From: Macrostomum lignano
Lineage: Eukaryota
Assembly (NCBI GenBank): GCA_002269645.1
Contig: NIVC01000731.1
Location: 372,001 to 436,000, forward strand
Length of the DNA stretch: 64,000 bases
Direction: 5' to 3'
Below, piece by piece: positions 16,101 to 60,920 of this stretch (the stretch's first letter is position 1; each line of letters opens with the position of its first letter). The notes beneath the pieces were generated by a model. That model was not told the origin of the DNA. It searched no databases and saw only the letters and a list, made by a program, of their open reading frames with translations. A program made the translations under genes and the position numbers.

Positions 16101-16200
16101 CACCAGACTTTGTACACCACTCCGGGCCTGATTAGCAGAGTGTCATTGGCTCTCAGCTGCTTGCCCGTGAGGCCGGACCACTCGTCTGAAAGTCCGGAAA
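13165..16200 (-). CDS. Multi-exon Ig-superfamily type I membrane protein with at least four C2-set-like domains, one TM helix and a tail of about 110 aa; 5' end unresolved (possibly to about 17000)
   Basis: Repeating exon pairs encoding EGSSVNFTCTSNSGYPQPQHRC, VIIRCQSEGGFPETEHRC, LQVTCFTGRGLPPSRHGC, VRATCEFSSGNPATSSNC, and F-strand motifs ASIECSV, GTVTCVL, SNVTCTL, GNIVCRV; TM VITLSLALVVALLLVLLMSLPI; last exon 13634-13165. Confidence 0.75.
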
Positions 16201-20012: not shown

Positions 20013-23000
20013 TCAGGTCAGGATGTCGGACAGAGACTGGAACTTTGGTCCCCAGGCGTCCAGCGTCGGTCTCAAGTCGATGGAGCTGTCCGTGTCGGCC
20101 GACACCAGACTCACCTGGTCCAGGTCGGCCGCGTCGTCGTCCCGCGTGTCCTCGTAGCCGTAGTTCAGCGTCTCGTCGCCAGCGGCTGCATCCGGGGGCT
20201 CCTGGTTGACGCTGTCTGGCGCCACAGGCTGGGTGGGCGGCGCGCCGATTGGGCGCAGCGGGTCGGCTGGACCGCCGGCTGCGGCTTTTTGGGGGTGTTG
20301 GTTGGTTGGTTGGTCTGTTTGTCATTTTGCTTCCAGTGAGTGCGGCTTCCCAGTGCTGAAGCTATTAGCTGAAGAATGGACCATTCATCTGGCAATAAAA
20401 CTTATTGGAGACTTACAAGGCGCCGATGAATGAACCGGTTGAAAGTTCGGCAGGCCTCCGTTGCTGTCCTTCTGAGCGGGTGGAAATTGCAGACTCAGCG
20501 GTCCTTTGTAGTCCTCGGGAGCTGAAGAAAAGTGAGTCTGATCAGTGACTCTTGGCGCTTAGAGTGAAACAGCAATGGTTGGTGGGTCAGAAGATTTACT
20601 CACGGACGCCGTCATTTCCGGTGTCATCTCCCATGTCCTGGTTTATCTGCTCGATGTCGCTCTTAGGAGCCTCGGACCCCCTTTGCTTTCGTGACCGCTT
20701 TACAAATGCAAGGAGAATCAACAGGACGATGATGAAGAAAACCACGATGGCAATGATGAGCCACACCCACCACTGCACCGCGGCAGTGGAAGGTGCTGGT
20801 GTGTTTTCGCCGCCAACTCGGCACATGCGGCTGGTGACCCCCGGCGGGCAGATGCACTCGAATCCCAGGTTGACGCCCGTCGCCCGGCACGACCCGCCGC
20901 TCGGGCAGCTGATGTTGAACTTGCTGCACGGGTTCACGGCAACGCAGCTCTTGCCCGCGTCTCTCTCCTGTCCTGCTGGACACTCGCAGGTCGTCTTGCC
21001 CCAGAGTCTCCGACAGACTTCCGTTGACGGACAGTCGCAGGGAGGCGTCAGGTCCACACCGTCGGGACCGACTCTGGCATCGCTGGCCAGCACTGGCGTG
21101 ATGAAGCCCCCTGTCGCCACATCGATGGACCGATCTGCAGCATCCGTAGTTGTAGACATGTACGTGCCGGAGACGCGGATGTTCCGCAGCCAGCCTGAGC
21201 GAATTCAGTGGAGAGGTGCTAATTGGTTCAATCAAGGTAGGAAACTGACACACTGGCACAGGCACTGACTTACTGTTGGCGATCTGGGCCGTCAAGTCCA
21301 AGTTCGAGAGGTCGGCCACGGTTCGGCCCAGGTCGTGCAGCCTGTCGACCCCGTCAACTCTCAGCTTGAGCACGGCTTGCCTGGTGGCGGCAAACACGGA
21401 GTGCCACTCGCCATCGTCGACTCTGATCGGCGGAAACGCTAAGCAGCTGGACGAGTTGATGCAGAGCTGCAGCAAGCCGTCCGAAATCTGGAGTCAGGGG
21501 AGGAAAATATTTGTATAAATTGAAGTTATGAGCTTCTTGGCTTCAGTTTAAAAAATTCAGCTCACATCCAAGCTCTGACTCAGAACGGTTGAACGTGCCG
21601 AATTCTTGATAACAGCATGCAGGACGCCAGTCGATGCACTGACTCGAGTTCGCAGCTCCAACTCGATGGATGCGGAATTTTTATCGCTTAGCGGTAGCGG
21701 ATTCGACAGGTTCTGGAACCAGCTGCTCGCATTGCTTGATGCGGTGCTGATTATCAGCGGATCTGCAGTCGAAACGTTCTCAAAATTCAAGCTTTCTAAG
21801 AAAACCTTTCATTTAATGTAGGAAATGTCTCACCTTTGGTGCACGCATTCCAGGGTTCGTTTCTCTTGCATAATTCGCTGCCAATAATTGTCTCTACCAT
21901 TTTTCTCTTCGACCCAAGGCATTCGCAGTTGCAGTCCATCGGAGCTGAGGGATCGTTCTTGATGACTCCGTAGCACACCGACTGCGCTCCGCAGACGTAC
22001 GGGCGGCTGGACCGCGCACCAGCCGTACCTGAGCAGGTTTGATTCTGTAGCCCACAGAAAGCTCCTATCGTGGCGCCTCCACCTTGTGTGACTTCCCTGC
22101 CAGCCGCCATGTCTATCAGGTAGCCGTTCACCCGAACTGACTGCACGCAGCCAGAGAGCGCTCTTCCAATATCAAGCCATAAATTAGGAAAGTCGCTAAC
22201 TGGACTGCCTGCACTGATGCTTTGAGAAGAGCATTCAAGAGGTTGCACACTGGCTGAAGTTGGCAGCTTTTTAGGGCAGACCACCATCCTGCTCTGAAAA
22301 CGGTTGGGATACTTTCCAGCTTCTGACAAATATATCTCAGTATGTATTGTCCAATCAGAACGTCTCTTACCAGTCCAGATTTCACTGATACATGGACAGC
22401 GAACCAGCTGCCGCTGTTTTGCTGAGGTAGGTCAACGCTAATAGAATCTCCTCCCAGTAAACTTCCAGCCACTCTGAGCTCTGTCTTCCTGTAGACAAAC
22501 GTTGCGCTGAGCAATGAGTTATTGGGGTCGGCCGAGCTCTTCAAGACTACGGCGTCCTGGTTTTCTTGCTGGATAGTTCCGGAAAGTTCAAATGAGATTT
22601 CCAGAGACTGAACCGAGTGCGGCAGGCCGCCAATCCAGTGGCGAGTGAAGGTCAGACCGGATAACCCGTGGCTGTAGCTTCTGACCGGGTACTCGCATCG
22701 CGGACCCCACGGGATGTTCGGGACTGACGGGCAGATGCACCTGCAGAGGGTGAAATTTTTTTGATCTGTTGATGAAATTGGTGCTTTTAAATGATGTCAG
22801 GCTTAGCTTTACCGTAGCTCAGCTCAGGCAGAAATTATTTTTCTCAGTCGAGCCGATCGCACACAACTTGCCTGGATCCGACACCAGTGAAGTTGGCATC
22901 GCAGACTCCGCCGTTCAGGCAGGTGGCCGGCCCGCACGGCTCTGCGCTCATCTGCTCCGCTGTCTGAGCCGTCCAGCTCAGCCCGAATCCCACGAAGTTC

Positions 23001-23818
23001 GAGTCGCTGTTGAGCTGCACCACAGCCGGATGCACCGACGGAAGCGAGCTGCTCGAAAAGCGCAGGCGACTGCGGCACAGCTGAGCGGAGTCAGCGGGAC
23101 ACCGGTCCGGCATCACCTGGACTCCGCTACTCGCTTCAGTTTCGTTCTTCACCAGCTCGTACGCCTCCCAGAGGGCCAAGTAGGAGCTGGTGCCGGCCTT
23201 CGGTATGAGCAGGGACACCTCTGAGGTGTCGGCGGCCGGCTGCAGCTGAGAGACGAGGCGGGCCGACAGCCGACTCTTGAGTCTGGCCACCAGACTGTTG
23301 ATGTCGTTCGTTCGACCTGCGGGAATTGAGCGGGCAGTTCTTGTGCGTAGGGAAATCAACAGGTCATGCCAAGCCCCGGCAATACTCACCTGAAATGAAT
23401 ATTGCATTGTCGAGCACGCTCAGGGGCAGCCGGGAGACTGTGACACTGAGCTGGTGAATGGCGGTGCCGATGGTCACCTGGACTAGGTGTGTGCCACCTG
23501 GCAGGTCGGCCTTGAACACAATCCTGTTTGGCACGGAGCTCCTGTCAACATCGAACTTGTCTGGCACCAGCCCGCTGCTCACGCTGTCGATAAGGTCCGA
23601 GCCGCTGATTGTCATGTAGGCGAAGCTGTACTTTGTGAAGTCCGCATCTGAGAAATGATTTAAACAGTTTGATCAGCAATCCATAGCCATGGCGTCTCAC
23701 CCATGTCCCGCAAGTGCAACTCACCGTCCGGCAGCCGGACTTCAACGCTGGCCGAGTCGCAGAGGCCGCCAGTGGCCAAAGCCAGCAGAATGAGGGCTGC
23801 AGAGCTGCACCGAAGCAT
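20013..23818 (-). CDS. DN-cadherin/type III classical cadherin-like protein lacking EC repeats, paralog 1, about 1011 aa: signal - one degenerate EC-like repeat - NCD - EGF - LamG - EGF - LamG - EGF - TM - cadherin cytoplasmic domain. Exons 23818-23725, 23647-23390, 23316-22872, 22740-22371, 22293-21834, 21762-21566, 21487-21274, 21194-20604, 20521-20417, 20314-20013
   Basis: Signal MLRCSSAALILLALATGGLC; EGF CGPATCLNGGVC..CICP..WGPRC; LamG VDDGEWHSV and LSGCVQSVRVNG; TM WWVWLIIAIVVFFIIVLLILLAFV; catenin-binding ETLNYGYE..LDAWGPKFQSLSDIL; exon phases sum to an open frame. Confidence 0.88.
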
Positions 23819-26599: not shown

Positions 26600-27080
<481 letters not shown>

Positions 27081-27731
27081 AGGCCTCCCAAAAGCCACTT
27101 CAATGTGATTGACAGAAATGAAAAATTTAAATGAGGTGTTGGAAACTAGAAGGGTGATCGATATGTGAGCTCAATAAGTGACCGATGGGAGATCGGTTGA
27201 TTCGAAGCCAGCAGAAGCCAGAAATCTAAGAAATGCTTTAACAAACTGGCAATTTTTGCACCCGGCAGCTCTGCACACTCGCCCGAGCGCCCCACCCAGA
27301 TCGATCCGCTGCCAGCCCGAACGAGTGAACAGCCTGCAGATTATTTTCAGCCACTCCCCGGCCCTTCAGTGCCAGCTGGGTTTGCGCCGCCTCGCCTTCC
27401 CAGAGACGCAAAGAATCGCGGCAAAGGTTGCGCCAGCCGTCCACTCAGCCAATTGCACTACGTCGTAGCAGCCAGACCAAATCTGGGGGGGGGGGGTTCT
27501 TCCCTCATCCCTCTCGGGTCCGCAGGCCCTTGATCCCTGTGTAAGCACGAACTTTTAGTAGGCGCTTTTGTTCGCGGCCCCTAGCGGGGTTTTAGCAGGC
27601 GGGCAGAGCGGCTAAAAGGGGATTTCTGCACGAATTTGAGAGTGCAGACACCTGGAAGCTCTCCGAGACCGCCGATCTTCGTCTGACTCACTGGGCAGCC
27701 ACTCTACCAGTGTTTAAAGTTCTCGTGTGTC

Positions 27732-29799
27732 ATGCCGCTGGCGGCTCTCTGGAGTTGCCGTGGCTCCAAAAAGCGGCAGCGAAAAGAGCAGCAGCAGCAA
27801 CATGGAGGCAAGGATCCCACTGCCACCTCCCGCGAGGCTGAGGTACCCGAGGATGTCGACTTGACCGAAGCTCTGGCCGACGAAGAGATCGCCGAGTGCG
27901 TGCAGACTTTCAACACATTCGACTACGACAACGACGGACGCATAAGCATGAAGGAGCTTGGCAACATCCTGCGCTGCCTTGGATACGGCTGCTCTCGGGC
28001 AGAGCTCAAGGTGAACTATCTTGGTATATAGTTGACAATATTCCTAGAGCCGCTAGGAATACTATGGTAGTCTCTAGGTGAGACAAGTCTAAACTCTACA
28101 GAGCCTTACCTGCCGAGCGTTCCTCCAGACCACAGAATTGTCCAGACAGAATCCTCCAGACCACAGAATTGTCCAGACAGAATCCTCCAGACCACAGAAT
28201 TGTCCAGACAGAATCCTCCAGACCACAGAAATGTCCAGACAGAATCCTCCAGATCACAGAATTATCTAGACAGAATCCTCCAGACCACAGAAATGTCCAG
28301 ACAGAATCCTCCAGACCACAGAATTGTCCAGACAGAATCCTCCAGACCACAGAAATGTCCGGACAGAATCCTCCAGACCACAGAATTGTCCAGACAGAAT
28401 CCTCCAGACCACAGAATTGTCCAGACAGAATCCTCCAGACCACAGAATAGTCCAGACAGAATCCTCCAGACCACAGAATTATCCAGACAGAATCCTCCAG
28501 ACCACAGAAATGTCCAGACAGAATCCTCCAGACCACAGAATCCTTCAGACCACAGAATCCTCCAGACCACAGGTCTCCCTGCTGACATTTATTACCATAC
28601 AATAGTAAAATTGTGTAGCCAATGCTAACGTGTGGATATGCCCCCACCTGTCCAATTTATGCTACATATCTGGTCAACTCTAACTTATGTACAGCCAAGT
28701 CTTTGTATAGACAAGCGTTCGGCAAACTCTTTTACGTCAAGGGCCAGATAGAGAACGTAGCGCACGACTGCGGGGAGGCGAGAGACGAGGGAAGAGAGAA
28801 GAGAGATTGGAGAAAGGGAGGCAATGAAATAAAGGAGACGACAGAAGAAGGAGAGATGAAATAGGAGAAGGAAGACGAGAGAAGAGAGAAAGGAGCTGAG
28901 AAGAGAGACAAATCTTAAGCAGGCCGGATTGCTATTGTAAAGCTTAAAAGAACACGAGGGTCGGATAGAGAGGCTTTGTGGACCGATCCCTGGCATAGAA
29001 GAAACCATCCCTTCTCGGCTGGAAAGGCTTGGCATGGCAGAGTGCTGAAGTTCCAGTGACAGTCTGCGGCCAGCCCTGGTGACCAGGCCAGCTGGAACGG
29101 AGTTTTTGCTGTATTCTCATTGTCTGAGTTGCAGGAGATTGTAGCCGAGTGGTTAGAGCGTCGGACTCATGACTTGAAGGTCGGGGGTTCGATTCCGGAT
29201 TCCACTGGAACAATTTATGTCCTTGATTAGCTAGGGTATTTGAGGCTGTGTGTGGCGACCCCCCTGACCATGGACTGAACAGCCGTACGCAGCCTTCAGA
29301 TGCGCCGCGCAATAGCTGCGGCTGAGCTGTCGGTTGCACATCTGGCCCAATTCGAGCAGGTGTAATCAGTTATTATTATATTACTGGGTTGCAGAATTCA
29401 CTGCAGAGGTCTCTGGATGTCTTTAAGTGGTAAGAATTCCCGCAAAACTCGAAACTTGGGCCTCAGAGTGCAGCCCTGCTCCCGCAGGAGATGTTCGCCG
29501 GCATTGACAAGAACGGAAACGGCTTCATTGACCTGCAGGAGTTCCTCGGCCTCGTGGGCCTCGGGCAGCTTCGCCACCGGCAGCAGACGGACCGCCAGCT
29601 GGCGAAGGCCTTCCGAGTCTTCGACGCCGACCGAGACGGCTTCATTGGCCCGGCGGAGCTGCGGGCTGCCCTGCGCCGCCTGTTGAAGCCCGCTGAGGTC
29701 ACCGACCGACTGGTGGACGACATGATTCGCGGCGCTGACCGTGACGGCGACGGACGCGTCTCCTTTGCCGAGTTCGTCGGCATCGTCAGCCCGCGGTAG
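27732..29799 (+). CDS. Calmodulin-like four-EF-hand protein with an N-terminal extension; exons 27732-28010 and 29488-29799
   Basis: EF loops DYDNDGRISMKE, DKNGNGFIDLQE, DADRDGFIGPAE, DRDGDGRVSFAE; phase-0 GT-AG junction. Confidence 0.9.
28120..28572. repeat. Minisatellite, 31-bp unit (ccagacagaatcctccagaccacagaattgt), intron of the EF-hand gene
   Basis: Tandem copies visible. Confidence 0.95.
29135..29385 (+). mobile_element. CORE-like SINE family B, internally deleted copy
   Basis: gtagccgagtggttagagcg..ggttcgattcc head; same 3' end (cagatgcgccgcgcaatagctg..) as the 34.0-kb copy. Confidence 0.75.
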
Positions 29800-30604
29800 C
29801 CGGAGCCATTGTGGATCGAGGCCAGCTGAGAGCTGGGGAATGCGGCCCAGTTTCTTGCCTTCCATCTGAAGAGCCCAATGACTCCACAAGCTGATATTGG
29901 TTGCACTCGTAGTTAAAATTTAGCGCTGTTTTTGCTGTACAGTACAGAATTCTTGGATCGCGTGCGTGCGGATGTCATTGCCCCAGGCTGCTGCGAGAAA
30001 TTTGCTTAAAAACAAACACTTTTTGTTGTCTCGATGAACTGCTGAGTTTTTTGCTAAGTTTACTCACTTCTCGCTTGTTGGGACGCAGAAGAAGAAATCT
30101 ATGCACTGTATCAGTGGGTAAATTCGCCCACTATGCATCAGCCCTAACCCAAGACAGATACTCAAGCCTGCTTAGTTTCTCACCGATTGGACATGGAGAC
30201 ATTTTGGGCTCTGTGAAGTCCTCTACTGACTCTACTCAGATGTAGATATGACCTCAGTGTAAAATGCTGGTACTACTTAGGATGCTCCGTCAATCTTCGT
30301 CCCCCGCGAGCTCGCAGACAACTCGGTGTACAATTGGCATATGTCTCGGGGCAGAGAAGTACAACTCAGGCTCAGGCGCAAACAATGAGAGCTTCAAGGC
30401 GTCCATATTTCTTGCACTCAGAGCTTCTCAACAGCAGCGAAGGAAGAGGAGGCGAGGTTCGCTACCGAAACTTGAAAAACTTTGCCTAGATAATTTCTAT
30501 CTGGGGGACGAAAATGAAACAGTCGGACAGTTGAAGCTGTGTTAGCTAAAAACTGCTCAAAACGCTGAATTTCTCAAATCGCTCCAAAACTCCAATCATC
30601 AAAA

Positions 30605-32092
30605 ATGCGAGCAAGTCAAGCAGTCACCGTCGCTCACATCGCGGTGCTGCTGACGATGCGCTGCTGCCTGAAGGTCATGGAGTACCAGTTCATCACACTG
30701 GCCGCAGCAAGCTCCAATGCCAGCACCGCCACCGAGGGAGTGGCGGACTCGGCCTCAGCGCTGTCCTGGATGTACACCTGCCGCTTTTTGCTAGGCGCTC
30801 TGGGCGGCCTGCTGGCCTGCTGGATCGGCCACGTGCGCACCCTGCAGCTGGGCGGCTGCGTCCTGCTGGCATCGGCTGGCGCCATGGCCGGCGCCGTGTA
30901 CACAGACCAGTGGAGCCCGGACTCTGGCGCCGCGCTGACCGCCTGCGCCCTCATGCTGGTCTACAACGGCCTGGTGATCCCCAACGTGATGTACGCAGTG
31001 CTGAGCAAGCGGACGAGGCCGCAGCGCCGCACGGTGCTCTGCGCGCTCGTCTACATGTCCTCCGCGGCCGGCCTGTTTGTGGGCATCCAGGTGCAGCACC
31101 TGCTGACCAACCCGAGCGTTGGCAAGCACTGCAGCCTCGTCTGGTTGGCCTTCGCCCTCGCCTTTGCCGCGCTCGCTATCCTGGCGCTGCCGCGGCTCGA
31201 CGCAGCAGCCGCGATGGCACCGAGCTCCGGGCAGCTCGACACGGCTCCGCCGCCGCCGTTTTCGAAGCTGCTGTGCGACTGCGGGCACGTCCTGCTGCCG
31301 ACTTGGAGCCGTCTGAAGCGCAGCTGCATCGTCTTCGGGACGCTGATCCCCTTCCTGGTGGGTCTGTGCGATGACCGGTCCTCGGCCTTCAACGCGCAGC
31401 GGGCGCTGCAGCCGCTCATCGCCAACTCCAGCGGAGGTAACTCCGGAAATGACCGATTGAGCGATTCGCTGGATAGCGCGCTGCTGGCAGTCAGCCTGGT
31501 GGCCGTCAACGGAGGTCTGGTGGTCGCCGCCTGCTGCCTGCGCGGTCGCAGACGTCTCCCAGTGCAGCCGCGGCTCCTGGCGGGCATCGTCATGGAGGCG
31601 GCCCTGGAGCTGGCGCTGGCGGCAGTCAGTGGCGTTGGGCTGGCCGACCCTGTGGCCGTGTCCGCGGTGTACACCGCTTCTACAGTGGTGGACGCGACCG
31701 CCGCCGCGCTGACGATGGTGGCCGCCTACGAGCTGATGGACAGCTTTGAGCGGGACGCCGCAATGCCACTGATTTTCGGCATCATGCTGACTGTGTGGGG
31801 TCTCGCGAACCTGGCCAGCCGCTGTATTGTCACGATCTGCCGCCGCTTGCCGCCCGACAACCCGATCCTGCAGCCGAGCGCCGGCAAGCCGCCTCTGCTG
31901 TTCGTCTACCACTCGCTGCTGCTGGCGCTGCTGCTGCTGAGCCTCGCCTTCTGGCGGCTGTTCGCCCTGCGGCTTGCCCGCTCGCTGCAGGTTATATATG
32001 AGGACGAGGGGCCGGAAGCTGCCGCCGGCCCCGTCAACGATGGCGACGGGGAGAACCGGCCGCTGCTGAACCCGCCATCAACTGATGGGTGA
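30605..32092 (+). CDS. Intronless MFS-fold transporter, 495 aa, probably a divergent POT/PTR2 (SLC15-like) member
   Basis: Long GC-rich ORF with many hydrophobic segments; LLGALGGLLACWIGHVRTLQLGG, GLVIPNV and LVYMSSAAGLFVG resemble POT motifs. Confidence 0.72.
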   Translation: MRASQAVTVAHIAVLLTMRCCLKVMEYQFITLAAASSNASTATEGVADSASALSWMYTCRFLLGALGGLLACWIGHVRTLQLGGCVLLASAGAMAGAVYTDQWSPDSGAALTACALMLVYNGLVIPNVMYAVLSKRTRPQRRTVLCALVYMSSAAGLFVGIQVQHLLTNPSVGKHCSLVWLAFALAFAALAILALPRLDAAAAMAPSSGQLDTAPPPPFSKLLCDCGHVLLPTWSRLKRSCIVFGTLIPFLVGLCDDRSSAFNAQRALQPLIANSSGGNSGNDRLSDSLDSALLAVSLVAVNGGLVVAACCLRGRRRLPVQPRLLAGIVMEAALELALAAVSGVGLADPVAVSAVYTASTVVDATAAALTMVAAYELMDSFERDAAMPLIFGIMLTVWGLANLASRCIVTICRRLPPDNPILQPSAGKPPLLFVYHSLLLALLLLSLAFWRLFALRLARSLQVIYEDEGPEAAAGPVNDGDGENRPLLNPPSTDG

Positions 32093-32548
32093 CGGCGATG
32101 GGCTCATAACCCTCTATACGTGTAATAATTGACCATTCGTAGGCTTTCTCAAGACCTACTTAGGACTTTACGAACTTTAAGAGATATCTTGCTCACATCG
32201 AAATCGCGCGCACAGAATTTGCGCAACCTATTTTAACAATTGTTGAACTCTCTTCACCGGTTACCCCAGTAGCCACATGGAATCAGTCTGCAAAACTGAG
32301 GTCCAGATCGCTCAAAGTCTCAGGTCATGCATTATGCTGGGCCGCTACAGTTGATTGATATAATGAATAAGTAAACATATTTTTCGATAAAAAGCTCCAC
32401 ACAGCAATACTTTCGTTTTCATTTAACTTCTGTGAAGATTACCCTAGCCATTCTAACATAGCGAACCGTAAACACCTTCTGACAATGGTTTATTTAGTCA
32501 TGAACAACTCCGAAATATGAACTAAATGTAGTCATCAACATGCAGCAC

Positions 32549-35500
32549 TCAGATGCATTTCGCTGCATATCTCCGCGGCGTTGAGCGCTGAGCTCCTGAC
32601 GATCGTCGAGACTGCGTTCGACGCCGCAACAGAAACACAAGAGCCACCACGATGAGGATGAGCACCATGACTCCGATGCTTACAATCAGCCAGACCCACC
32701 AGTTGACTCCGGCAGAGGTGAAAACTGTTCTGGCTTCACTGCTACTCCTGCACATGGTGACCCCCGGCGGGCAGATGCACTCGAATCCCAGGTTGACGCC
32801 CGTCGCCCGGCACGACCCGCCGCTCGGGCAGCTGATGTTGAACTTGCTGCACGGGTTCACGGCAACGCAGCTCTTGCCCGCGTCTCTCTCCTGTCCTGCT
32901 GGACACTCGCAGGTCGTCTTGCCCCAGAGTCTACGGCAGACTTCCGTTGACGGACAGTCGCAGGGAGGCGTCAGGTCCACACCGTCGGGACCGACTCTGG
33001 CATCGCTGGCCAGCACTGGCGTGATGAAGCCCCCTGTCGCCTCATTGATAGACCGATCTGCAGCATCCGTAGTTGTAGACATGTACGTGCCGGAGACGCG
33101 GATGTTCCGCAGCCAGCCTGAGCGAATTCAGTGGAGAGGTGCTAATTGGTTCAATCAAGGTAGGAAACTGACACACTAGCACAGGCACTGACTTACTGTT
33201 GGCGATCTGGGCCGTCAAGTCCAAGTTCGAGAGGTCGGCCACGGTTCGGCCCAGGTCGTGCAGCCTGTCGACCCCGTCAACTCTCAGCTTGAGCACGGCT
33301 TGCCTGGTGGCGGCAAACACGGAGTGCCACTCGCCATCGTCGACTCTGATCGGCGGAAACGCGAAGCAGCTGGACGAGTCGATGCAGAGCTGCAGCAAGC
33401 CGTCCGAAATCTGGAGTCAGGGGAGGAAAATATTTGTATAAATTGAAGTTATGAGCTTCTTGGCTTCAGTTTAAAAAATTCAGCTCACATCCAAGCTCTG
33501 ACTCAGAACGGTTGAACGTGCCGAATTCTTGATAACAGCATGCAGGACGCCAGTCGATGCACTGACTCGAGTTCGCAGTTCCAACTCAATCGATACGGAG
33601 TTTTTATCGCTTAACTGTAGCGAATTGTTCGGGTTCTCGAACCAAGTGCTTGGATTGCTTGATGCGGTGCTGATTATCAGTGGATCTGCAATTTCAATCA
33701 GTTCACTGAAGTTCAAGTGGGGGTTGTAGCCAGTGGGGGTTGTAGCCAGTGGGGGTTGTAGCCAGTGGGGGTTGTAGCCAGTGGGGGTTGTGGCCAGTGG
33801 GGGTTGTAGCCAGTGGGGGTTGTGGCCAGTGGGGGTTGTAGCCAGTGGGGGTTGTAGCCAGTGGGGGTTGTGGCCAGTGGGGGTTGTGGCCAGTGGGGGT
33901 TGTAGCCAGTGGGGGTTGTAGCCAGTGGGGGTTGTGGCCAGTGGGGGTTGTAGCCAGTGGGGGTTGTAGCCAGTGGGGGTTGTGGCCAGTGGGGGGTTGT
34001 AGCCTAGTAGTTAGAGCGTCAGACTCACGACTTGAAGGTCGGGGGTTCGATCCCCGATCCCACTGGAACAATTTGTGTCCTTGAGCAAGACGCTTAACTC
34101 TGCATTGCTTCAGTTCACCCAGCTGTAAAATGGGTGCCAGCAATAGCTGGGGTAATTGAAGGCGTGTGGTGACCCCCCGTCCTTGGACTGAACAGCCGTA
34201 CGCAGCCTTCAGATGCGCCGCGCAATAGCTGCTACTGAGCTGTCGGTTGCACATCTGGCCCAATTGGGGCAGGTGTAACCAATTATATTATTATTATTGT
34301 TTACTGAAGTTCAGCTTTGGGTTATCAAGCTATGTGTGAATTCCAAACTCGTCTTACCTTGTGTGCACTCGTTGGACTGCCGATCTTTCCTGCACTTGGC
34401 ACTGGAGCCGACCGTCTCAAGCTTCTTTCGCTTCGATCCCAGGCACTGGCAGTTGCAGTCCATCGGAGCTCCTTTGCTTTTAGTCACGATCCCATAGCAG
34501 ACCGACTGCGCTCCGCACACGAATGTGCCGGAGCCGCCGCAGCTGCCGCTTTGAAACTTGCAGTCGTCTTCCACTTTGGAGTCCCCGGTTGTCACGGCCC
34601 TGCTGGCCTTCGCGTCCACCAAATAGCCGTTCACGGTGACTGATTGCACGCAGCCAGTGAGCGCCTGGCCGATCTCAAGCCAGAGGTTGGTAAAGTCCGA
34701 GACCGAACCACCAGAATTGACGCTCTTGGTCTGGCACTCGAGCGGAATTGGATTGCTTGAGACGCCTGCGAGCTTCTTTGGGCACAGAACTGCTCGAGTC
34801 TGCAATTGGTTGCCAAGTTGGTTCAGCTCTGGTTGATAAGCAAGCGCATGCGAGATTTATCCCAGAAACTCTCACCAGATTTGGAGTCATGAGAATGTGA
34901 AAAGTGAACCAGTTCCCTTGGTTAAGGCCTGCAGATGATACATCAAAGCTTTTTCCAAGAAGCAGACTTCCGGCCACTCTGAGTGTTGTAGTCCGGAAGA
35001 TCAGCGATGCACTGAGCATTGAACTGCCTGGATTGTTGGGACTCTTCAGCGCCAGCGTCTCGTGGCCTGCTTTTTCGATTGATCCGGACAGCTCAAATGA
35101 GATTTCCAGAGACAGAGCCGAGTGCGGCAGGCCGCCAATCCAGTGGCGAGTGAAGGCCAGACCGGATGACCCGTGGCTGTAGCTTCTGACCGGGTACTCG
35201 CATCGAGGACCCCACGGGGTGTTCGGCGCTAACGGACAGATGCACCTGCAGATTGGCAGAACTTTTTTAATCAGGCTTTACTAACAGATGCAACTAGCAA
35301 TCTAGTGCTTCTAATGGGGTTCTATTAGCAAGAAACGAAAAATATTTATGAGAACCTCTTAAAACGAAAGCATTTCTCTTAAAAGCATTCCTATTTCAGT
35401 TTAATAAATCACTTTGTTCGAGTAAATTTGTTCAAAAAATTGAATAATTTTTTTGAATAAACTAAATGTATGTTCTGACCTTTCAGTCTTGATACGCTCG

Positions 35501-38218
35501 TCTCTGCATTTTTCCCAGTAAGCCTTGACATCTCAGCAATTCCCCCAGTAAGCCTTGACATCTCAGCAATTCCCCCAGTAAGCCTTGACATCTCAGCAAT
35601 TCCCCCAGTAAGCCTTGACATCTCAGCAATTCCCCCAGTAAGCCTTGACATCTCAGCAATTCCCCAGTAAGCCTTGACATCTCAGCAATTCCCCCAGTAA
35701 GCCTTGACATCTCAGCAATTCCCCCAGTAAGCCTTGACATCTCAGCAATTCCCCCAGTAAGCCTTGACATCTCAGCAATTCCCCCAGTAAGCCTTGACAT
35801 CTCAGCAATCCCCCAGCAAGCCTTGACATCTCAGCAATTCCCCCAGTAAGCCTTGACATCTCAGCAATCCCCCAGCAAGCCTTGACATCTCAGCAATCCC
35901 CCAGCAAGCCTTGACAAAGATACTGTCCTAAAATGAAAACGGAATTTTGTAACCTTCGAACTGTCAGGCACGCTTGTTTAAATTGTCAGGACAAGGCTGA
36001 CAAGGACAAGGACAAGGTTGTCAAGGCTGTGGTTTAAGCCTACATATCAGAGACAGCAATGAGAAGGGATATACGCTATCAACTTGGAAAGCTTATCGGC
36101 ACCTGCGTCAATATTCCGGCATAATGTTTTCGAGACTTCTCTTTCAAAAGCTGAAAAATAACATTCGTGCAGAAAATCTAAGAAAGCGGGCAGAACAGTC
36201 TTTAGCCACGCCTGTGCTTGAGAGCCACCTGAATTCACCTGAACCCGAAGCCAGTGAAGTTGGCATCGCAGACTCCGCCGTTCAGGCAGGTGGCCGGTCC
36301 GCACGGCTCTGCGCTCATCTGCTCGGCTGTCTGAGCCGTCCAGCTCAGCCCGAATCCCACGAAGTTCGAGTCGCTGTTGAGCTGCACCACAGCCGGATGC
36401 ACCGATGGAAGCGAGCTGCTCGAAAAGCGCAGGCGACTGCGGCACAGCTGAGCGGACTCAGCGGAACACCGGTCCGGCATCACCTGGACTCCGCTACTCG
36501 CTTCAGTTTCGGTCTTCACCAGCTCGTACGCCTCCCAGAGGGCCAAGTAGGAGCTGGTGCCGGCCTTCGGTATGAGCAGGGACACCTCTGAGGTGTCGGC
36601 GGCCGGCTGCAGCTGAGAGACGAGGCGGGCCGACAGCCGACTCTTGAGTCTGGCCACCAGACTGTTGATGGGGTCTCGAGAACCTGTTTAATAATAGGCA
36701 AGCAGTGCGGGTGTTGATAACTGAGTTTGAAAATGAGCATTAGCTATTTATACTGGCAGCTCCATACCAGCAATGAAGATGGCGCTGTCAATGACGCTCA
36801 GTGGCAGGCTGGAGACTCGCAAATTCAACTGGTGAGATACAGTTCCAGCTTTCACCTGCACCACGTGTACGCCATTCTTTAGGTCGGGAGGCCTGAGCAC
36901 GAGTCTGTTGGGTGTGGAGCTCTTGTCAACGGTGAACTTGGTCGCAACGTCGCCTGCGCCGATCACTCTGTCCATCCTGTCTACGCCCGATATTCTCAGG
37001 TAGGCGGCGCCGTACTTTCTGAAGTTGGCATCTGCGCGTTGACGGAGAGGGAGCGCAACGTTTTGATTTGTTTTAGCTGGTCGCACGGTTGCACAAAAAG
37101 TAATTAAGGGTGGGATGTGGGCACCCTGGATCAATGCTTCCGGTAAAATCGTCCCACAACCAGCGGCGGGGCGATTCTTCCCATTGCACTGACTCCTGGG
37201 CACGCGCTGTACTGTCCCAAGTGGATCAGGCGAGGGGAGAGGGGGGACATGCCAATGCTTTGTCCCCCCACCCGACCTCCTGACCCGTTGTGATAATCAA
37301 CACTTTTTCTTCAGGGTGCAAAATATAGCGCCAAAAATAATGCCTGCGGAGCTAAAGGGAATGCCTGCGGCGCAAAAATGAGTACCTGCGGCGCCTAAAT
37401 GAGTGCCTGCGGCGCAAAAATGAGTACCTGCGGCGCCTAAATGAGTGCCTGCGGCGCAAAAATGAGTACCTGCGGCGCCTAAATGAGTGCCTGCGGCGCA
37501 AAAATGAGTACCTGCGGCGCCTAAATGAGTGCCTGCGGCGCAAAAATGAGTACCTGCGGCGCCTAAATGAGTGCCTGCGGCGCCTTAATGAGTGCCTGCG
37601 GCGCAAAAATGAGTGCCTGCGGCGCAAAAATGAGTACCTGCGGCGCCTTAATGAGTGCCTGCGGCGCAAAAATGAGTGCCTGCGGCGCCTAAATGAGTGC
37701 CTGCGGAGCTAAAAGGAGTGCCTGCGGTGCCTAAATGAGTGCCTGCGGCGCCAAATGACTTCTTGCGGCGCCAAATGACTTCTTGCGGCGCCAAAACAAG
37801 TGCCTGCGGCGCTAAAAGGAATGTCTGTGGCGCCAAAATGAGCGCTGACCACACCGATTCTCAAAAGACGAGTAATGGACATGTAGGAATTTGGTCATGC
37901 ATATGTACATGTTGAATTCTTGGCTTCGTCCCCCCCACCATAAAATCCATGGCGACGCCCCTGATGTGGATACTGCACGCAGGCGCGCTCTCAAAGACAC
38001 GCTTCCACAGGGTGTACAGCAGACCTCACTTCTTAATCGTCAGGCGTGTGCACTCTCTGCGTGTGCACTCTCTGGATTGGCCCTCAAAGATGTGTACGTT
38101 CAACAGGAGGCTGGCACTCACCATCTGGTAGCAAGACTTCAACTTCAGCTTTGTCGCAGTAGGCACTGGCGAGCACCGCCAGCAGGATGGCTGCAACTGC
38201 AGGTCCGTACCGGAGCAT
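32549..38218 (-). CDS. EC-less DN-cadherin-like paralog 2, about 865 aa, with only a short basic cytoplasmic tail. Exons 38218-38122, 37031-36768, 36683-36239, 35245-34876, 34799-34358, 33685-33489, 33410-33197, 33117-32549
   Basis: Signal MLRYGPAVAAILLAVLASAYC; exon-for-exon colinear with paralog 1 (several identical exon lengths: 445, 370, 197, 214); TM WWVWLIVSIGVMVLILIVVALVFLL, then RRRTQSRRSSGAQRSTPRRYAAKCI-stop. Confidence 0.87.
33716..34302 (+). mobile_element. CORE-like SINE family B preceded by a 16-bp minisatellite, bounded by an 11-bp target-site duplication
   Basis: actgaagttca at 33705-33715 and 34303-34313; SINE from about 33990; (tat)n tail. Confidence 0.85.
35510..35915. repeat. 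Minisatellite, 30-bp unit (cagtaagccttgacatctcagcaattcccc), intron of cadherin-like paralog 2
   Basis: Tandem copies visible. Confidence 0.95.
37227..37963 (-). mobile_element. hAT-like MITE (same family as 16283-16550) with an expanded internal repeat of about 23 bp
   Basis: End tggcgacgcccctg; flanks aagtggat / atgtggat; internal (aaatgagtgcctgcggcgc..)n at about 37340-37830. Confidence 0.78.
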
Positions 38219-38739
38219 GGCTGAGTCAGACTGGGCTTCGACCTCGGATGCTCTGCTCTCAGCTTGAATCAGCAGAGCAGCTCTCGGTCGGCTGGGCAGT
38301 TCATTTTAAGGTTGCGACTCGCGCGGCCCGGCAGTGACAGGCGCGCAATTTTGCGCATAATTTGCTAGCAACGCCTGCGGCCCGGCTGAAGCTGGCAAAC
38401 CCTCGGTAACCCGGTTAAGCTGTCTCTATTAATATTCAATTTGTTTGCAATTACGCAGCACATTAAGAAACGTAATTTTATCAGATATTTTCTCAAATTA
38501 GCATTTCCACAATGCCTTACGCTTGTAACCGCACCTGCTCAGACCCCACAGGTAAATCATTGCGAAGTTCTTCTACGAGCGTATGTGCGTATTTTTAACA
38601 GAAAGGGATCGAAGTTTTATCCCCATTGCGTTGAAAAGTCGCATTAATTTTGTCTGTAGGACCGAGAGTTACGCGCGATTTCACGTCTGCTGTTGCTGGC
38701 GACGAGCTACGAGAGTAACTGCAACTACCTGTCTGTACC

Positions 38740-39250
38740 AATTTGGTGAAGCTAATTGGTCACACAATTCACATGGGCCCTGAGCCCCTGGTCCCTGCCC
38801 CTTCTACGTTCATCGATCGTCAGATCGATGACTGGGCTGATTCCCTTCACAGGGACAGATGGGCGGGCACCCAGGACTGCCGGCGATTCCGGTCCGCGGT
38901 TCCGAGCCCTTCCCGCAGGTTCAGAAACATCCTTCTCACTCAAAATCAGAAGGATATCCGCGCCCTTGTCATGACACTTACCGGTCACGGCTACCTCACC
39001 AGGCTCTGCTTCCTCCGAGAGTGAACTTTACCCTTTTTGAGAATTCCCTTTCTTCACCAAAGACCGGTACGATACCTCGTACGATACCCGTCTTTTGACG
39101 AGGTCTGCCAGCCCAGCCCGAAAGCATCCCACGGCTCATCCAGTTCCTCCGGGAGACAAGACAAGCCATGCACTTTCTTCCCCACGGAAGATCACGCTGC
39201 AGGACGGACCGGCGGACCAACCCTGACCGGCTCCACGCCTCTCCCTGCCT
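38740..39250 (+). mobile_element. Degraded 3' part of an R1/LOA/I-like non-LTR retrotransposon ORF2
   Basis: Translation HMGPEPLVP..IDDWADSLHRDRW..DCRRFR..LLTQNQKDIRALVMTLTGHGYL and downstream RLIQFLRET resemble the post-RNase H region of such elements. Confidence 0.7.
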
Positions 39251-39254
39251 GCGG

Positions 39255-39560
39255 TCTGAAGGGCTGGCCGCATCCTGGGGAATTCCCATTTCCCATCCAG
39301 CGGGTTTAAAGGGCTGGCCACATCCTGGGAAATTCCTACCCAGTGGGTCTGAAGGGCTGGCCGCATCCTGGGGAATTCCCATTTCCCACCCAGCGGTTCT
39401 GAAGGGCTGGCCGCATCCTGGGGAATTCCCACCCAGCGGTTCTGAAGGGCTGGCCGCATCCTGGGGAATTCCCACCAGCGGATCTGAATGGCTGGCCGCA
39501 TCCTGGGGAATTCCCACCCAGCGGGTCTGAAGGGCTGGCCGCATCCTGGGGAATTCCCAT
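39255..39560. repeat. Minisatellite, about 41-bp unit (ctgaagggctggccgcatcctggggaattccc..)
   Basis: Tandem copies visible. Confidence 0.9.
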
Positions 39561-40564
39561 CCCTCTTGCAAGACACGATGTGAATTCGAGCATGTGTACT
39601 GGTTGTTGTCGGTTTGAGGGGCTGAGCAGGAACTGAAAGAGGCTTCATTTTTCAGTTTAAATGGCTCACTTGAGTCTAAACCTATGTCGGCTATCTGGAT
39701 AAGGGTCTGCTTCACACGTCACTATTGATAGTAGTATCAACAGCAGTTTAAACGTTTTGGTTTCCCTTTTTCGTACCTAGTGATTTTCGTTGCATACTAC
39801 TGTGACATGATCATGAGTAAAGTGCAAGTTGATTTTTTCTACACGTATTTATGTGTTAAAACGCCGAGATGAACCTGACATTCGACCCGGCCAGTTCCAG
39901 TTCTCCTATGCTTGCTAGCTGAGAAAGTCAACACAGACCGCTCTGTTTGTCCTCGACAAACTGTGGTGCAGACAGCCCTCCGCTTGTCTAATCTTCATGC
40001 TGAGCTGTCTATGACAGAAAAGCTCTCAAAACAAAAAAGACTGCTAGCAACCCGCAGTTAACTCAATCACTGAAGTGCGGGACTGTATTTTCCTGATGGC
40101 TCTTGGGGCTCGCATCTGTGAGGCGCAGGCGGGAGTCTTCCGAAATCACACGGCGTCATGCAAATAACATGCGAAAATTAATTAAAAAGCAATTTAGGAA
40201 ACTGGACCAAAAGTTTACTGGGCATGGAGAAACGAGAGCATCGATTCGATTGACAAAGTATACGACGTAAATCCGAGGCTGTTTCTCCTGGGGTACTGCA
40301 CAGACAACGATTAGATATCGAAAATTCGAAAGAGGCGCAGACACACTGGGCTCGAGGCCGATGTCGAGCTGAGTGAAGTTAAGCAAAGCGAGTTCCATGG
40401 GGATTCGATCAGGTTCTCAGGGAGAATTTGCGCAAATTCGAGCCAGTCAATCAATATTCGCTGATTAAGAAAATTGACATTTAAGCCGCAGTCTTTCCAC
40501 TACAAAGCAAATTAATTACAGAGTGCGCATCGGCCTGAGGAAAGGGGGAGTCGCGTCGGCAGCT

Positions 40565-40921
40565 TCAGGTGCGCACCTGCACGGTGACACCGCTGAGGGT
40601 GTTCCACAGCTGCAGCACTTTGCCCCTGGAGGCGCTGGCGCTCTTCGCCTGCCTGCGATCGTACAGCGACGGCAGCGGCGGAGCCACGAAGTAGGTCGTC
40701 GGCCGGCTGCTAGTGTAGCTGAAGGGCGGCCGGTGCTGGCTGGGGTACGGCAGCAGCAGGTTCGGCGCCGTGCGGGCGCGCCGCAGCTGGGCCTCCTCGC
40801 GCTGCCGGTCCTGCTGCTCCAGTCGCTGCCGGCGCATCCGCATCTCCTCGCGCATGTAGAAGCCGTAGATCTGGTTGGAGGTGTGCGGCTTCTCGCTCAG
40901 CCAGTTGTTGTAGTAGTCCAT
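40565..40921 (-). CDS. Small uncharacterised protein (118 aa if unspliced)
   Basis: ATG-initiated ORF with the same strong GC3 bias as the true exons nearby; family not recognised; possible donor at CAG|GTGCGC near the end. Confidence 0.6.
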   Translation of the reverse strand: MDYYNNWLSEKPHTSNQIYGFYMREEMRMRRQRLEQQDRQREEAQLRRARTAPNLLLPYPSQHRPPFSYTSSRPTTYFVAPPLPSLYDRRQAKSASASRGKVLQLWNTLSGVTVQVRT

Positions 40922-60846: not shown

Positions 60847-60920
60847 GGCGCTGGCGGGGGCTCAAGTATGGACTGGCTGGTGCTGGCGTGGCTGGCAGGT
60901 GCTGCAGTCGGATGGACACA

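What the first reader, a model, noticed from the sequence alone, without database searches (positions are those of the whole stretch)
32549..32760. Paralog 2 has lost the whole catenin-binding tail: candidate decoy or dominant-negative partner
Seen: paralog 1 has two further exons ending in ETLNYGYE..LDAWGPKFQSLSDIL. Paralog 2 instead reads about 25 basic residues past the TM to a TGA at 32549-32551. Only about 450 bp separate it from the convergent transporter gene, and that gap has no NYGYE/WGPKF-like exon. The sequences diverge abruptly just before the TM, right after a near-identical tract. Established: tail-less cadherins cannot couple to beta-catenin and actin. Inference: a paired signalling/decoy receptor arrangement with similar ectodomains and opposite intracellular capacity.
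Basis: partly seen in the sequence, partly recalled or inferred. Interest (0 to 1): 0.7.

Follow-up and report, generated by a model that had tools for sequence, protein, structure and literature searches.

The report
Tail-less paralog of a flatworm cadherin relative
In the flatworm Macrostomum lignano, one of two neighbouring cadherin-derived membrane-protein genes really does end 25 residues after its membrane anchor and lacks the catenin-binding tail. It is conserved and is expressed in the female sperm-receiving organ, but nothing shows that it acts as a decoy for its tailed neighbour.

Summary
The window is Macrostomum lignano DNA. Two minus-strand paralogs have clean GT/GC-AG gene models. 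P1 (23818-20013, 10 exons, 1001 aa) carries a classical-cadherin-type catenin-binding tail. P2 (38218-32549, 8 exons, 865 aa) stops at TGA 32551-32549, after a 25-residue transmembrane segment and a 25-residue basic tail.

No second tail exon exists in the 64 kb. The 456-bp gap to the convergent gene is AT-rich and full of stop codons. An AATAAA lies 57 nt after the stop. A 96-98% identical sister locus has the same stop and signal.

The abrupt divergence at 32755 is the 3' edge of a 936-bp gene-conversion tract. Unconverted exons are old (dS about 0.8-1.3, 57% amino-acid identity).

P2 is under purifying selection (dN/dS 0.29, p=2e-4). Published data place the sister-locus copy in the tail region and the female antrum, while P1 is expressed body-wide.

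Both proteins derive from type III classical cadherins, but neither has cadherin repeats, as in amphioxus Bb-cadherins.

The decoy or dominant-negative reading is untested and fits poorly with organ-restricted expression. A catenin-independent surface protein of the antrum is the better reading.

The parts
32549..38218 (-). P2 gene, 8 coding exons: 38218-38122, 37031-36768, 36683-36239, 35245-34876, 34799-34358, 33685-33489, 33410-33197, 33117-32549. It encodes 865 aa: signal peptide, N-terminal beta-rich domain, EGF/LamG/EGF/LamG/EGF region, transmembrane segment, 25-residue tail.
   Evidence: all junctions are GT-AG and the frame is intact. Pfam finds LamG and EGF only; 98% identical to PAA54150.1 (BOX15_Mlig019320g1, 865 aa).
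32627..32701 (-). P2 transmembrane segment WWVWLIVSIGVMVLILIVVALVFLL.
   Evidence: It is homologous to the P1 transmembrane segment (WWVWLI shared), but at the old divergence level.
32552..32626 (-). P2 cytoplasmic tail RRRTQSRRSSGAQRSTPRRYAAKCI: 25 aa, 9 basic, 0 acidic.
   Evidence: It does not match the cadherin-tail profile. The sister locus has one change, C864R.
32549..32551 (-). P2 stop codon TGA.
   Evidence: The same stop occurs in locus L001 and in UniProt A0A1I8F1L8, also 865 aa.
32489..32494 (-). AATAAA polyadenylation-type signal, starting 57 nt after the first base of the stop codon.
   Evidence: It is conserved at the same distance in L001.
32093..32548 (.). 456-bp non-coding gap between the P2 stop and the stop of the convergent ORF.
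   Evidence: GC 0.40, 8-13 stops per frame, 97.1% identical to L001 without gaps; no tail-like exon.
32755..33690 (-). Gene-conversion tract B. It is 936 bp with no gaps and 97.2% identical to P1 21767-20832. It spans exon 6, intron 6, exon 7, intron 7 and the first 363 bp of exon 8. Its 3' edge is the 'abrupt divergence'.
   Evidence: dS is 0.064 here against 1.1-1.3 on either side.
36238..36670 (-). Gene-conversion tract A: 433 bp within exon 3, 97.7% identical to P1 23303-22871.
20013..23818 (-). P1 gene, 10 coding exons: 23818-23725, 23647-23390, 23316-22872 (GC donor), 22740-22371, 22293-21834, 21762-21566, 21487-21274, 21194-20604, 20521-20417, 20284-20013. It encodes 1001 aa.
   Evidence: From the start methionine on, it is identical to PAA77667.1 (BOX15_Mlig000582g4).
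20013..20521 (-). P1 tail exons 9 and 10. They encode the catenin-binding-type tail (NYGYE at 20165-20151, WGPKF at 20054-20040). P2 has no counterpart.
   Evidence: (PF01049, 23.7 bits).
30605..32092 (+). Convergent 495-aa ORF encoding a polytopic membrane protein (about 10-12 hydrophobic segments).
   Evidence: no Pfam family; hydropathy; intact and 97% identical in L001.
36833..38320 (-). Region covered by the published in situ probe RNA815_35951. The forward primer lies at 38320-38297 in the 5'UTR and the reverse primer at 36856-36833 in exon 2.
   Evidence: both primers match exactly and once only in the window, and also match L001 exactly; the pattern is 'antrum' (PMC7336406, supplementary tables).

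Best explanation
P2 is a real, long-lived, tail-less paralog of P1.

Shown:
- Both genes descend from the membrane-proximal LamG/EGF-transmembrane-tail part of a type III classical cadherin, and neither has cadherin repeats.
- P1 keeps a classical catenin-binding-type tail.
- P2's reading frame ends 25 basic residues after the membrane. A poly(A)-type signal follows 57 nt later, and there is no tail exon downstream.
- The duplication is old. Two later gene-conversion events re-homogenised exon 3 and the exon 6-8 region. The second tract stops 18 codons before the transmembrane segment, which produces the abrupt divergence.
- P2 has stayed under purifying selection.
- Published data class the P2 gene model (annotated on the 98% identical sister locus) as tail-region specific with an antrum in situ pattern, while P1 is expressed along the whole body.

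Inferred:
- P2 cannot recruit beta-catenin/alpha-catenin through the canonical motif. It therefore works as a catenin-independent surface protein of the antrum epithelium.
- It most likely mediates adhesion or recognition through its LamG/EGF ectodomain, anchored only by the membrane span and a positive-inside stop-transfer tail. This is comparable to the short-tailed LI-/Ksp-cadherins or T-cadherin.
- Any interaction with P1, through the two shared ectodomain segments, is possible but secondary and unproven.
For: - Gene models and stop codon.
- No tail exon in 64 kb.
- Non-coding character of the 456-bp gap.
- AATAAA 57 nt after the stop, conserved in L001.
- Same 865-aa product in the colinear sister locus NIVC01002960.1 and in UniProt A0A1I8F1L8.
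- The Mlig_3_7 annotation is built from RNA-seq-guided transcripts with poly(A)-site data: PMC5730564.
- Purifying selection on P2: 20 synonymous against 18 non-synonymous changes, dN/dS 0.29, p=2e-4. In the unconverted part alone dN/dS is 0.28, p=0.016. P1 gives 0.33.
- Old duplication with intact frame and splice sites: unconverted dS 0.8-1.3 and introns that cannot be aligned.
- Expression: Mlig019320.g1 is classed 'Tail' with in situ pattern 'antrum', and Mlig000582.g7/g11 are 'Non-Specific' with 410-1300 reads (PMC7336406). The probe primers map uniquely to P2's 5'UTR and exon 2.
- Descent from type III cadherins: a phmmer search of 1.8 billion representative proteins aligns the LamG-EGF-transmembrane-tail region to the C-termini of 2,500-3,000-aa 'neural-cadherin' proteins, E 1e-11 to 1e-4.
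Against: - No protein-level or functional data exist for either paralog.
- The 3' end of the P2 mRNA was not seen directly here. It is inferred from the ORF, the AATAAA and a transcript-derived annotation of the sister copy.
- The window's own P2 copy has no annotated protein in the collection. Expression could therefore come mainly from the sister locus. The in situ primers match both copies.
- The in situ entry carries no literature reference, so it is probably a personal communication in PMC7336406.
- Selection on the 25-residue tail itself cannot be judged: one synonymous and one non-synonymous change.
- Part of the constraint signal lies in tracts that exchange sequence with P1.
- Catenin-independent adhesion is an analogy, not a test.
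Confidence: 0.6

Rival explanations
1. Decoy or dominant-negative partner. P2 binds the same partners as P1, or P1 itself, through the shared ectodomain segments. Because it cannot couple to catenins, it locally weakens or titrates P1-based junctions.
For: - P2 lacks the tail while P1 has it.
- Gene conversion keeps about 1.37 kb of ectodomain sequence nearly identical in both genes.
- P1 is expressed body-wide, so it is probably also present in the antrum.
- From general knowledge: tail-deleted E-cadherin acts as a dominant negative in Xenopus embryos.
Against: - Outside the two tracts the ectodomains are only 57% identical, including the N-terminal domain and the first LamG.
- Expression is organ-restricted, not matched to P1.
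- Gene conversion between tandem paralogs needs no selective explanation.
- No binding data exist.
Confidence: 0.2
2. The tail is not really missing. P2 transcripts splice from a cryptic donor in exon 8 to unrecognised downstream exons, or to P1's exons 9-10 about 12 kb downstream on the same strand, as in clustered protocadherins (variable exon plus shared constant exons).
For: - P1 lies downstream on the same strand, and its exon 9 acceptor is phase 1.
- A phase-1 GT exists just after the transmembrane segment (CGGC|GTCGAA). One ab initio model (UniProt A0A1I8H4E9, 2795 aa) splices out at about that point.
Against: - That GT matches the donor consensus only at GT.
- The ab initio model continues into the antisense strand of the neighbouring membrane-protein and EF-hand genes, so it is an artefact (one search compared).
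- The transcript-derived model ends at the TGA.
- An AATAAA lies 57 nt downstream.
- Two plus-strand genes lie between P2 and P1.
- No other tail-like exon is present.
Confidence: 0.05
3. P2 is a decaying or functionless copy that lost its 3' end by deletion or rearrangement and persists by chance, with conversion from P1 masking the decay.
For: - The tail exons are gone without trace.
- The window's own copy has no annotated protein.
- Conversion tracts import selected sequence from P1.
Against: - dS to P1 is about 1 in unconverted exons, yet all 8 exons, their splice sites and the EGF cysteines are intact in two loci.
- dN/dS is 0.28 in unconverted codons, p=0.016.
- There is specific, spliced expression in one organ.
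Confidence: 0.05
4. P2 acts mainly as a released ectodomain. The short-tailed membrane form is a precursor that is shed into the antrum lumen, where the LamG/EGF ectodomain acts on sperm or ejaculate.
For: - The only distant full-length relative found (P0004, 797 aa, from a transcript-like contig) has a signal peptide and the whole ectodomain but stops after the last EGF, with no transmembrane segment.
- Tail-region transcripts of this species are enriched in secreted reproductive proteins (PMC7336406).
- From general knowledge: type III cadherins are cleaved in the region preceding the LamG/EGF complex.
Against: - P2 keeps a strongly hydrophobic 25-residue transmembrane segment and a positive-inside tail in both loci.
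- No cleavage site was identified.
- P0004 is a single contig of unknown species.
Confidence: 0.1

Closest known systems
Amphioxus Bb1- and Bb2-cadherin (classic cadherin-related molecules without cadherin repeats; Oda et al. 2002, 2004, as reviewed in PMC3216324)
   Same: The ectodomain is built only from the LamG/EGF modules shared with type III cadherins. There are no cadherin repeats, a single transmembrane segment, and they occur as a pair of paralogs. P1 also keeps a classical cadherin cytoplasmic domain (PMC3216324).
   Different: Both amphioxus proteins keep the catenin-binding tail, whereas P2 has lost it. The animals belong to different phyla (flatworm against cephalochordate), so the loss of repeats is probably independent. 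Orthology was not tested. Adhesive activity and junctional localisation are shown for the amphioxus proteins and are unknown here.
Type III (non-chordate) classical cadherins, e.g. DN-cadherin / 'neural-cadherin' of Ptychodera, Strigamia, Ylistrum
   Same: There is detectable homology from the second LamG through EGF, the transmembrane segment and (for P1) the tail to their very C-terminus.
   Different: Those proteins carry 10-17 cadherin repeats and an Ig_Shg domain. P1 and P2 begin with a signal peptide and have none. P2 also lacks the tail.
Naturally catenin-independent cadherins: LI-cadherin (CDH17) and Ksp-cadherin (CDH16) with roughly 20-residue tails, and GPI-anchored T-cadherin (CDH13). 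This comparison rests on my own knowledge and was not tested here.
   Same: They are members of an adhesion family that have dispensed with the catenin-binding tail yet are conserved, tissue-restricted and functional. P2 works like these in the preferred reading.
   Different: Their ectodomains are made of cadherin repeats. They are vertebrate genes unrelated by descent to P2's truncation. P2's adhesive activity is untested.
Clustered protocadherin / UGT1-type loci (variable exons spliced to shared constant tail exons)
   Same: Tandem same-strand units each encode an ectodomain, a transmembrane segment and a short cytoplasmic stub, with tail exons present only at the downstream end.
   Different: P2's unit is multi-exonic and ends in an in-frame stop followed by AATAAA. 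It has no consensus donor, and two opposite-strand genes intervene. The defining splice arrangement is not met.

Membership tests
Classical cadherin (type III / non-chordate type) | Tandem extracellular cadherin (EC) repeats, Pfam PF00028 | tested here: not met
   No PF00028 match in P1 or P2 at E<=0.1, nor in their N-terminal segments at E<=10. tblastn with a 17-repeat cadherin finds no EC-like exon anywhere in the 64-kb window. Both genes start with a signal peptide. The AlphaFold model was too poor (pLDDT 38) to look for a cryptic repeat.
Classical cadherin (type III / non-chordate type) | Membrane-proximal LamG/EGF complex homologous to that of type III cadherins | tested here: met
   Pfam finds LamG and EGF in both. 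phmmer aligns query 665-1094 to the C-terminal 300-430 residues of 2,400-3,000-aa cadherins, which do carry PF00028, LamG and PF01049. blastp of P1 631-806 against P0007 2586-2760 gives E=3e-15.
Classical cadherin (type III / non-chordate type) | Conserved cytoplasmic catenin-binding domain (PF01049; D..YE core, Ser cluster, WG..F..LA C-terminal cap) | tested here: inconclusive
   P1 is borderline. PF01049 scores 23.7 bits against a cut-off of 24. In alignment A1 the columns D106, E114, L124, D139, L144, W147, G148, F151 and L154 are invariant with canonical tails. The A1 profile hits the E-cadherin chain of 1I7W, but that profile is dominated by canonical tails. P2 has no match at all, so the feature is not met for P2.
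Classical cadherin (type III / non-chordate type) | Physical binding of beta-catenin and localisation at adherens junctions | not testable with these tools
   This needs pull-down or co-IP and immunolocalisation.
EC-less classic cadherin-related molecules (amphioxus Bb1C/Bb2C type) | LamG/EGF-only ectodomain plus a classical cadherin cytoplasmic domain | tested here: met
   Met for P1, with the tail at the borderline level described above. P2 meets only the ectodomain half.
EC-less classic cadherin-related molecules (amphioxus Bb1C/Bb2C type) | Common descent with the amphioxus genes (orthology) | not tested
   No amphioxus sequence was retrieved. The nearest identified relatives are EC-bearing cadherins of several phyla, which favours independent loss of the repeats.
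Decoy / dominant-negative receptor paired with a signalling paralog | Lacks the intracellular coupling domain that the partner has | tested here: met
Decoy / dominant-negative receptor paired with a signalling paralog | Same binding specificity as the partner | not testable with these tools
   Only sequence is available. Identity is 94-95% in two tracts and 57% elsewhere.
Decoy / dominant-negative receptor paired with a signalling paralog | Co-expression with the partner in the same cells | tested here: inconclusive
   From the literature only. P2 is classed 'Tail' with an 'antrum' pattern and P1 is 'Non-Specific'. Overlap in the antrum is possible but has not been shown.
Protocadherin-cluster-type variable/constant exon locus | The variable unit ends in a splice donor joined to shared downstream tail exons | tested here: not met
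   There is an in-frame TGA, only a non-consensus phase-1 GT, an AATAAA 57 nt downstream, and intervening opposite-strand genes. RNA-level confirmation was not possible.

The most novel reading that the evidence does not exclude
P2 is a female-tract-specific, catenin-uncoupled version of the animal's general junctional cadherin-like receptor. Selection, not mere proximity, maintains gene conversion of the membrane-proximal LamG/EGF and exon-3 segments. This lets P2 co-assemble with P1 and locally loosen or remodel the antrum epithelium, for example to let sperm anchor in it or eggs pass. That would be a naturally evolved, organ-specific dominant-negative adhesion receptor involved in post-mating interactions.
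Probability: 0.1. Interest if true: 0.7.

Novelty: new variant of a known kind. Interest (0 to 1): 0.4.

Why it matters
Classical cadherins without any cadherin repeat have so far been described only in amphioxus (PMC3216324). A flatworm pair with the same reduced architecture would be a second, probably independent, case. It would show that the LamG/EGF module plus a catenin tail can stand alone.

The tail-less paralog adds a natural experiment. It has the same kind of ectodomain but no catenin coupling. It is conserved and is restricted to the organ where received sperm attach. Macrostomum lignano has RNAi, in situ hybridisation and transgenesis, so two questions are directly testable: what a catenin-free member of this family does, and whether the shared converted segments matter.

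Practically, the two genes are currently named only 'hypothetical protein' or 'EGF-like domain-containing protein'. One public model (A0A1I8H4E9) is a chimera.

Tried and rejected
1. Stop codon on a relic splice donor. By eye, P2's ...ATCTGAGTG lines up with P1's exon-8 donor ...GTCC|GTGAGT, and an alternative frame restores a 'DM' motif. However, the post-transmembrane nucleotide alignment scores no better than shuffled sequence (593 of 1000 shuffles reach the observed score for the whole segment, and 384 of 2000 for the last part). The idea is dropped, and how the tail was lost remains unknown.

2. AlphaFold2 on a 4-sequence alignment (A2) gave mean pLDDT 38 and pTM 0.27. No fold search was run, so a cryptic cadherin-like fold in the N-terminal 100 residues is neither shown nor excluded.

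3. phmmer of the P1 tail alone against PDB found only a chance hit. Only a profile that included canonical tails reached 1I7W.

4. Searches for further relatives were unproductive. The word-indexed search returned only M. lignano proteins, and with P0004 as query only P0004 itself. The tail loss therefore could not be dated with outgroups.

5. An exact-product look-up of the last-exon ORF in public assemblies found nothing.

6. Literature searches for the gene identifiers in main texts, for the run SRR30276812, and for Macrostomum plus cadherin gave nothing specific. Two supplements did not contain the identifiers.

7. Assembly artefact as the cause of the truncation or of the near-identical tracts is rejected. 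Two contigs and an independent UniProt model agree on the 865-aa product, and the tracts carry paralog-specific fixed differences.
Full report
**Source and gene models.** The window is genomic DNA of the flatworm Macrostomum lignano. A search with the P2 protein returned only M. lignano proteins. My P1 model equals PAA77667.1 (BOX15_Mlig000582g4), which lies on a 459,047-bp contig of assembly GCA_002269645.1. Both paralogs are on the minus strand. All junctions have canonical splice sites, with one GC donor in P1.
- P1 is 23818-20013, 10 exons, 1001 aa.
- P2 is 38218-32549, 8 exons, 865 aa. Its exon structure matches P1 exons 1-8, with the same phases.
- Two plus-strand genes lie between them: an EF-hand gene (about 27687-29796) and a 495-aa polytopic membrane-protein ORF (30605-32092).

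**Observation check.**
- P2's last exon encodes the final EGF-like region, a 25-residue transmembrane segment (32701-32627), then RRRTQSRRSSGAQRSTPRRYAAKCI and TGA at 32551-32549.
- P1 continues through exon 8 into exons 9 and 10, ending ...ETLNYGYE...LDAWGPKFQSLSDILT.
- The space to the convergent ORF is 456 bp. It has 40% GC against 61% in the exon, 8-13 stops per frame, and no open stretch above 37 codons.
- Three searches find no second tail anywhere in the 64 kb: a motif scan, tblastn of the P1 tail at E<=100, and an HMM of cadherin tails against every open stretch of 15 aa or more. In the HMM search P1 exons 8-10 score 5.7e-26, 4.8e-6 and 9.5e-4, and the next hit has E=15.

**Is the truncation real?**
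- A colinear locus on another contig (L001, NIVC01002960.1) is 96-98% identical across genes, introns and intergenic DNA. It carries the same 865-codon frame, the same stop, and the same AATAAA starting 57 nt after the stop.
- A further 865-aa model exists in UniProt, A0A1I8F1L8.
- The GenBank annotation of this assembly was derived from RNA-seq-guided transcripts cut with trans-splicing and poly(A)-site data (PMC5730564). The 865-aa model of the sister copy is therefore transcript-based.
- One public model that does read past the stop (A0A1I8H4E9, 2795 aa) continues into the antisense strand of the two neighbouring genes and is an artefact (one search compared).
- A protocadherin-like splice from P2 exon 8 to P1's tail exons is not supported. 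The only phase-compatible GT is non-consensus, the stop is in frame, and a poly(A)-type signal follows.
- Caveats: the mRNA 3' end was not seen directly, and the window's own P2 copy has no annotated protein in the collection.

**Why the abrupt divergence.** Genomic comparison of P2 with P1 shows two tracts of near-identity.
- Tract A is 36670-36238 against 23303-22871, at 97.7% identity.
- Tract B is 33690-32755 against 21767-20832, 936 bp without a gap, at 97.2% identity.
- Tract B runs straight through two introns.
- Elsewhere only exons align, at 67-80% identity, and introns do not align at all.

By segment:

| Segment | dS | Amino-acid identity |
|---|---|---|
| Unconverted exons 1-2 | 0.82 | 57% |
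| Unconverted exons 4-5 | 1.10 | 57% |
| Transmembrane segment + tail | 1.28 | 36% |
| Tract A | 0.071 | 94% |
| Tract B | 0.064 | 95% |

The pair is thus an old duplication overlaid by recent gene conversion, and 32755 is the 3' edge of tract B. Site patterns among five copies show 14 fixed P1/P2 differences in exon 3 and none beyond the first 111 bp of tract B. A few sites group copies by locus instead. Exchange therefore continued until about the time the two loci diverged.

**Is P2 alive?**
- Window copy against L001 copy: 20 synonymous and 18 non-synonymous differences, dN/dS 0.29, excess of synonymous changes p=2e-4. Unconverted codons alone give 0.28, p=0.016. P1 gives 0.33.
- The 69 codons of transmembrane segment, tail and stop hold only two differences and say nothing on their own.
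- Brand et al. 2020 (PMC7336406) class Mlig019320.g1 as tail-region specific and assign it the in situ pattern 'antrum', the female sperm-receiving organ, through probe RNA815_35951. The P1 genes Mlig000582.g7/g11 are 'Non-Specific', with 410-1300 reads in all body fragments.
- Both probe primers match exactly and once only in the window, in P2's 5'UTR (38320-38297) and exon 2 (36856-36833). This region is only about 67% identical to P1.
- The gene is therefore expressed, spliced and organ-restricted, although the data cannot separate the two 98% identical copies.

**What the proteins are.**
- Pfam sees only LamG and EGF in both proteins.
- An exhaustive phmmer search of 1.8 billion representative proteins finds one relative at 30% identity (P0004). 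After that it finds 2,400-3,000-aa 'neural-cadherin' proteins of a centipede, an acorn worm, a scallop and a crinoid. These align from the second LamG through EGF, the transmembrane segment and the tail to their last residues. They carry 10-17 cadherin repeats, Ig_Shg, LamG and the cadherin tail domain.
- P1's tail scores 23.7 bits on PF01049 against a cut-off of 24, and aligns with canonical tails at the D..YE core, the Ser-rich stretch and the WGPKF..L cap.
- Neither paralog has a cadherin repeat, and no repeat-like exon exists in the window.
- P0004 comes from an intron-less contig, probably a transcript. It also begins with a signal peptide directly followed by this ectodomain.
- P1 and P2 are therefore classical-cadherin derivatives reduced to the LamG/EGF complex. 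That architecture is described for amphioxus Bb1-/Bb2-cadherin (PMC3216324).

**Mechanism.**
- Shown: P2 is a type I membrane protein with this ectodomain and a 25-residue basic tail that has no similarity to the catenin-binding domain or, in the profile search, to the juxtamembrane region.
- Inferred: P2 cannot join the cadherin-catenin-actin link and acts as a catenin-independent surface protein of the antrum. It most likely mediates adhesion or recognition through LamG/EGF, as the amphioxus proteins do. Functionally it would be comparable to short-tailed or GPI-anchored cadherins (comparison from my own knowledge).
- The decoy/dominant-negative idea remains possible, because P1 is probably present in the same organ and two ectodomain segments are shared. 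It has no direct support, and it fits organ-specific expression and 57% identity elsewhere less well.
- A shed-ectodomain role is suggested only by P0004, which ends after the last EGF without a membrane anchor.
- 'Signalling' by P1 is an assumption. In planarians the adhesive and Wnt-signalling beta-catenins are separate genes (PMC5643146).

**Novelty and score.** Tail-less cadherins and repeat-less classical cadherins are each known. A conserved, organ-specific, tail-less member of a repeat-less pair in a flatworm, with conversion-maintained mosaic identity, is a new variant and not a new kind. No paper in the searchable library links these genes to cadherins. I score interest at 0.4: worthwhile for cadherin evolution and for Macrostomum reproductive biology, but the headline claim (decoy) is unproven.

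**What failed.**
- The structure prediction was unusable.
- The 'stop on a relic donor' idea was not better than chance.
- Outgroups to date the tail loss were not found.
- Direct RNA evidence for the 3' end could not be retrieved.

Noticed in passing
window 20013-23818 and 32549-38218: Both paralogs are classical-cadherin derivatives with no cadherin repeat at all: signal peptide, then a roughly 250-aa unassigned N-terminal region, then EGF/LamG/EGF/LamG/EGF. This architecture is otherwise described for amphioxus Bb-cadherins. Public names are only 'hypothetical protein' and 'EGF-like domain-containing protein'.
   Followed up: yes
window 36238-36670 and 32755-33690 (partners 22871-23303 and 20832-21767): Two gene-conversion tracts link the paralogs. 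The second includes two introns. Some sites group copies by locus instead of by paralog, which suggests exchange after the two loci diverged.
   Followed up: yes
L004 about 8760 (NIVC01002960.1; counterpart of window about 20200, P1 exon 10): The sister locus's P1 copy (PAA54147.1, 1045 aa) has a 1-bp deletion in a C5 run that frameshifts the tail just before the NYGYE core. The otherwise identical L002 copy has C5. This is probably a long-read homopolymer error, but if real it would be a second, very recent tail loss.
   Followed up: partly
L002 9717-15501 (NIVC01001867.1): A third P1 copy (PAA63156.1) is 99.8% identical to the L001/L004 copy. It sits in flanks unrelated to the window and has an extra 930 bp or so in intron 9. 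No P2, EF-hand or membrane-protein gene lies next to it.
   Followed up: partly
L003 (Logan SRR30276812 contig, 2698 bp): This is the only distant full-length relative (P0004, 797 aa, 30% identity, species unknown). It covers the whole ectodomain and stops after the last EGF with no transmembrane segment in any frame, so it is apparently a secreted family member.
   Followed up: partly
window 30605-32092 (+): A 495-aa ORF with about 10-12 hydrophobic segments has no Pfam family at E<=0.1. It is intact and 97% identical in L001, where only its last 177 aa are annotated. 'Transporter' is a guess from topology only.
   Followed up: partly
UniProt A0A1I8H4E9 (P0051), covering window about 27700-41000: This 2795-aa 'RING-type domain-containing protein' model fuses an upstream gene, P2 up to just after its transmembrane segment, and antisense readings of the membrane-protein and EF-hand genes. 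It is a chimeric ab initio prediction.
   Followed up: partly
window 36833-38320: The published probe length for RNA815_35951 is 446 nt, but the primers span 398 nt on my spliced model. An in-frame alternative acceptor 45 nt upstream of exon 2 (about 37076) would give 443 nt. A minor isoform or a table inaccuracy is possible.
   Followed up: no
window 33716-34004, 35514-35916, 37328-37842 (P2 introns); 24587-25495, 26600-27082, 28121-28572, 39253-39561: There are dense minisatellite and microsatellite arrays with periods of 4, 5, 16, 21/42, 30, 31 and 43 bp. Three of them lie inside P2 introns and are absent from P1, which explains much of P2's larger gene size.
   Followed up: partly
window 59440-60861 (-), 47103-48323 (-), 3582-7033 (-), 13168-16200 (-): Other genes in the window are a LIM-domain protein (2 LIM domains), a pepsin-type aspartyl protease, exons with RING-H2 and IQ motifs, and a membrane protein with repeated beta-rich exons and no Pfam match.
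   Followed up: partly
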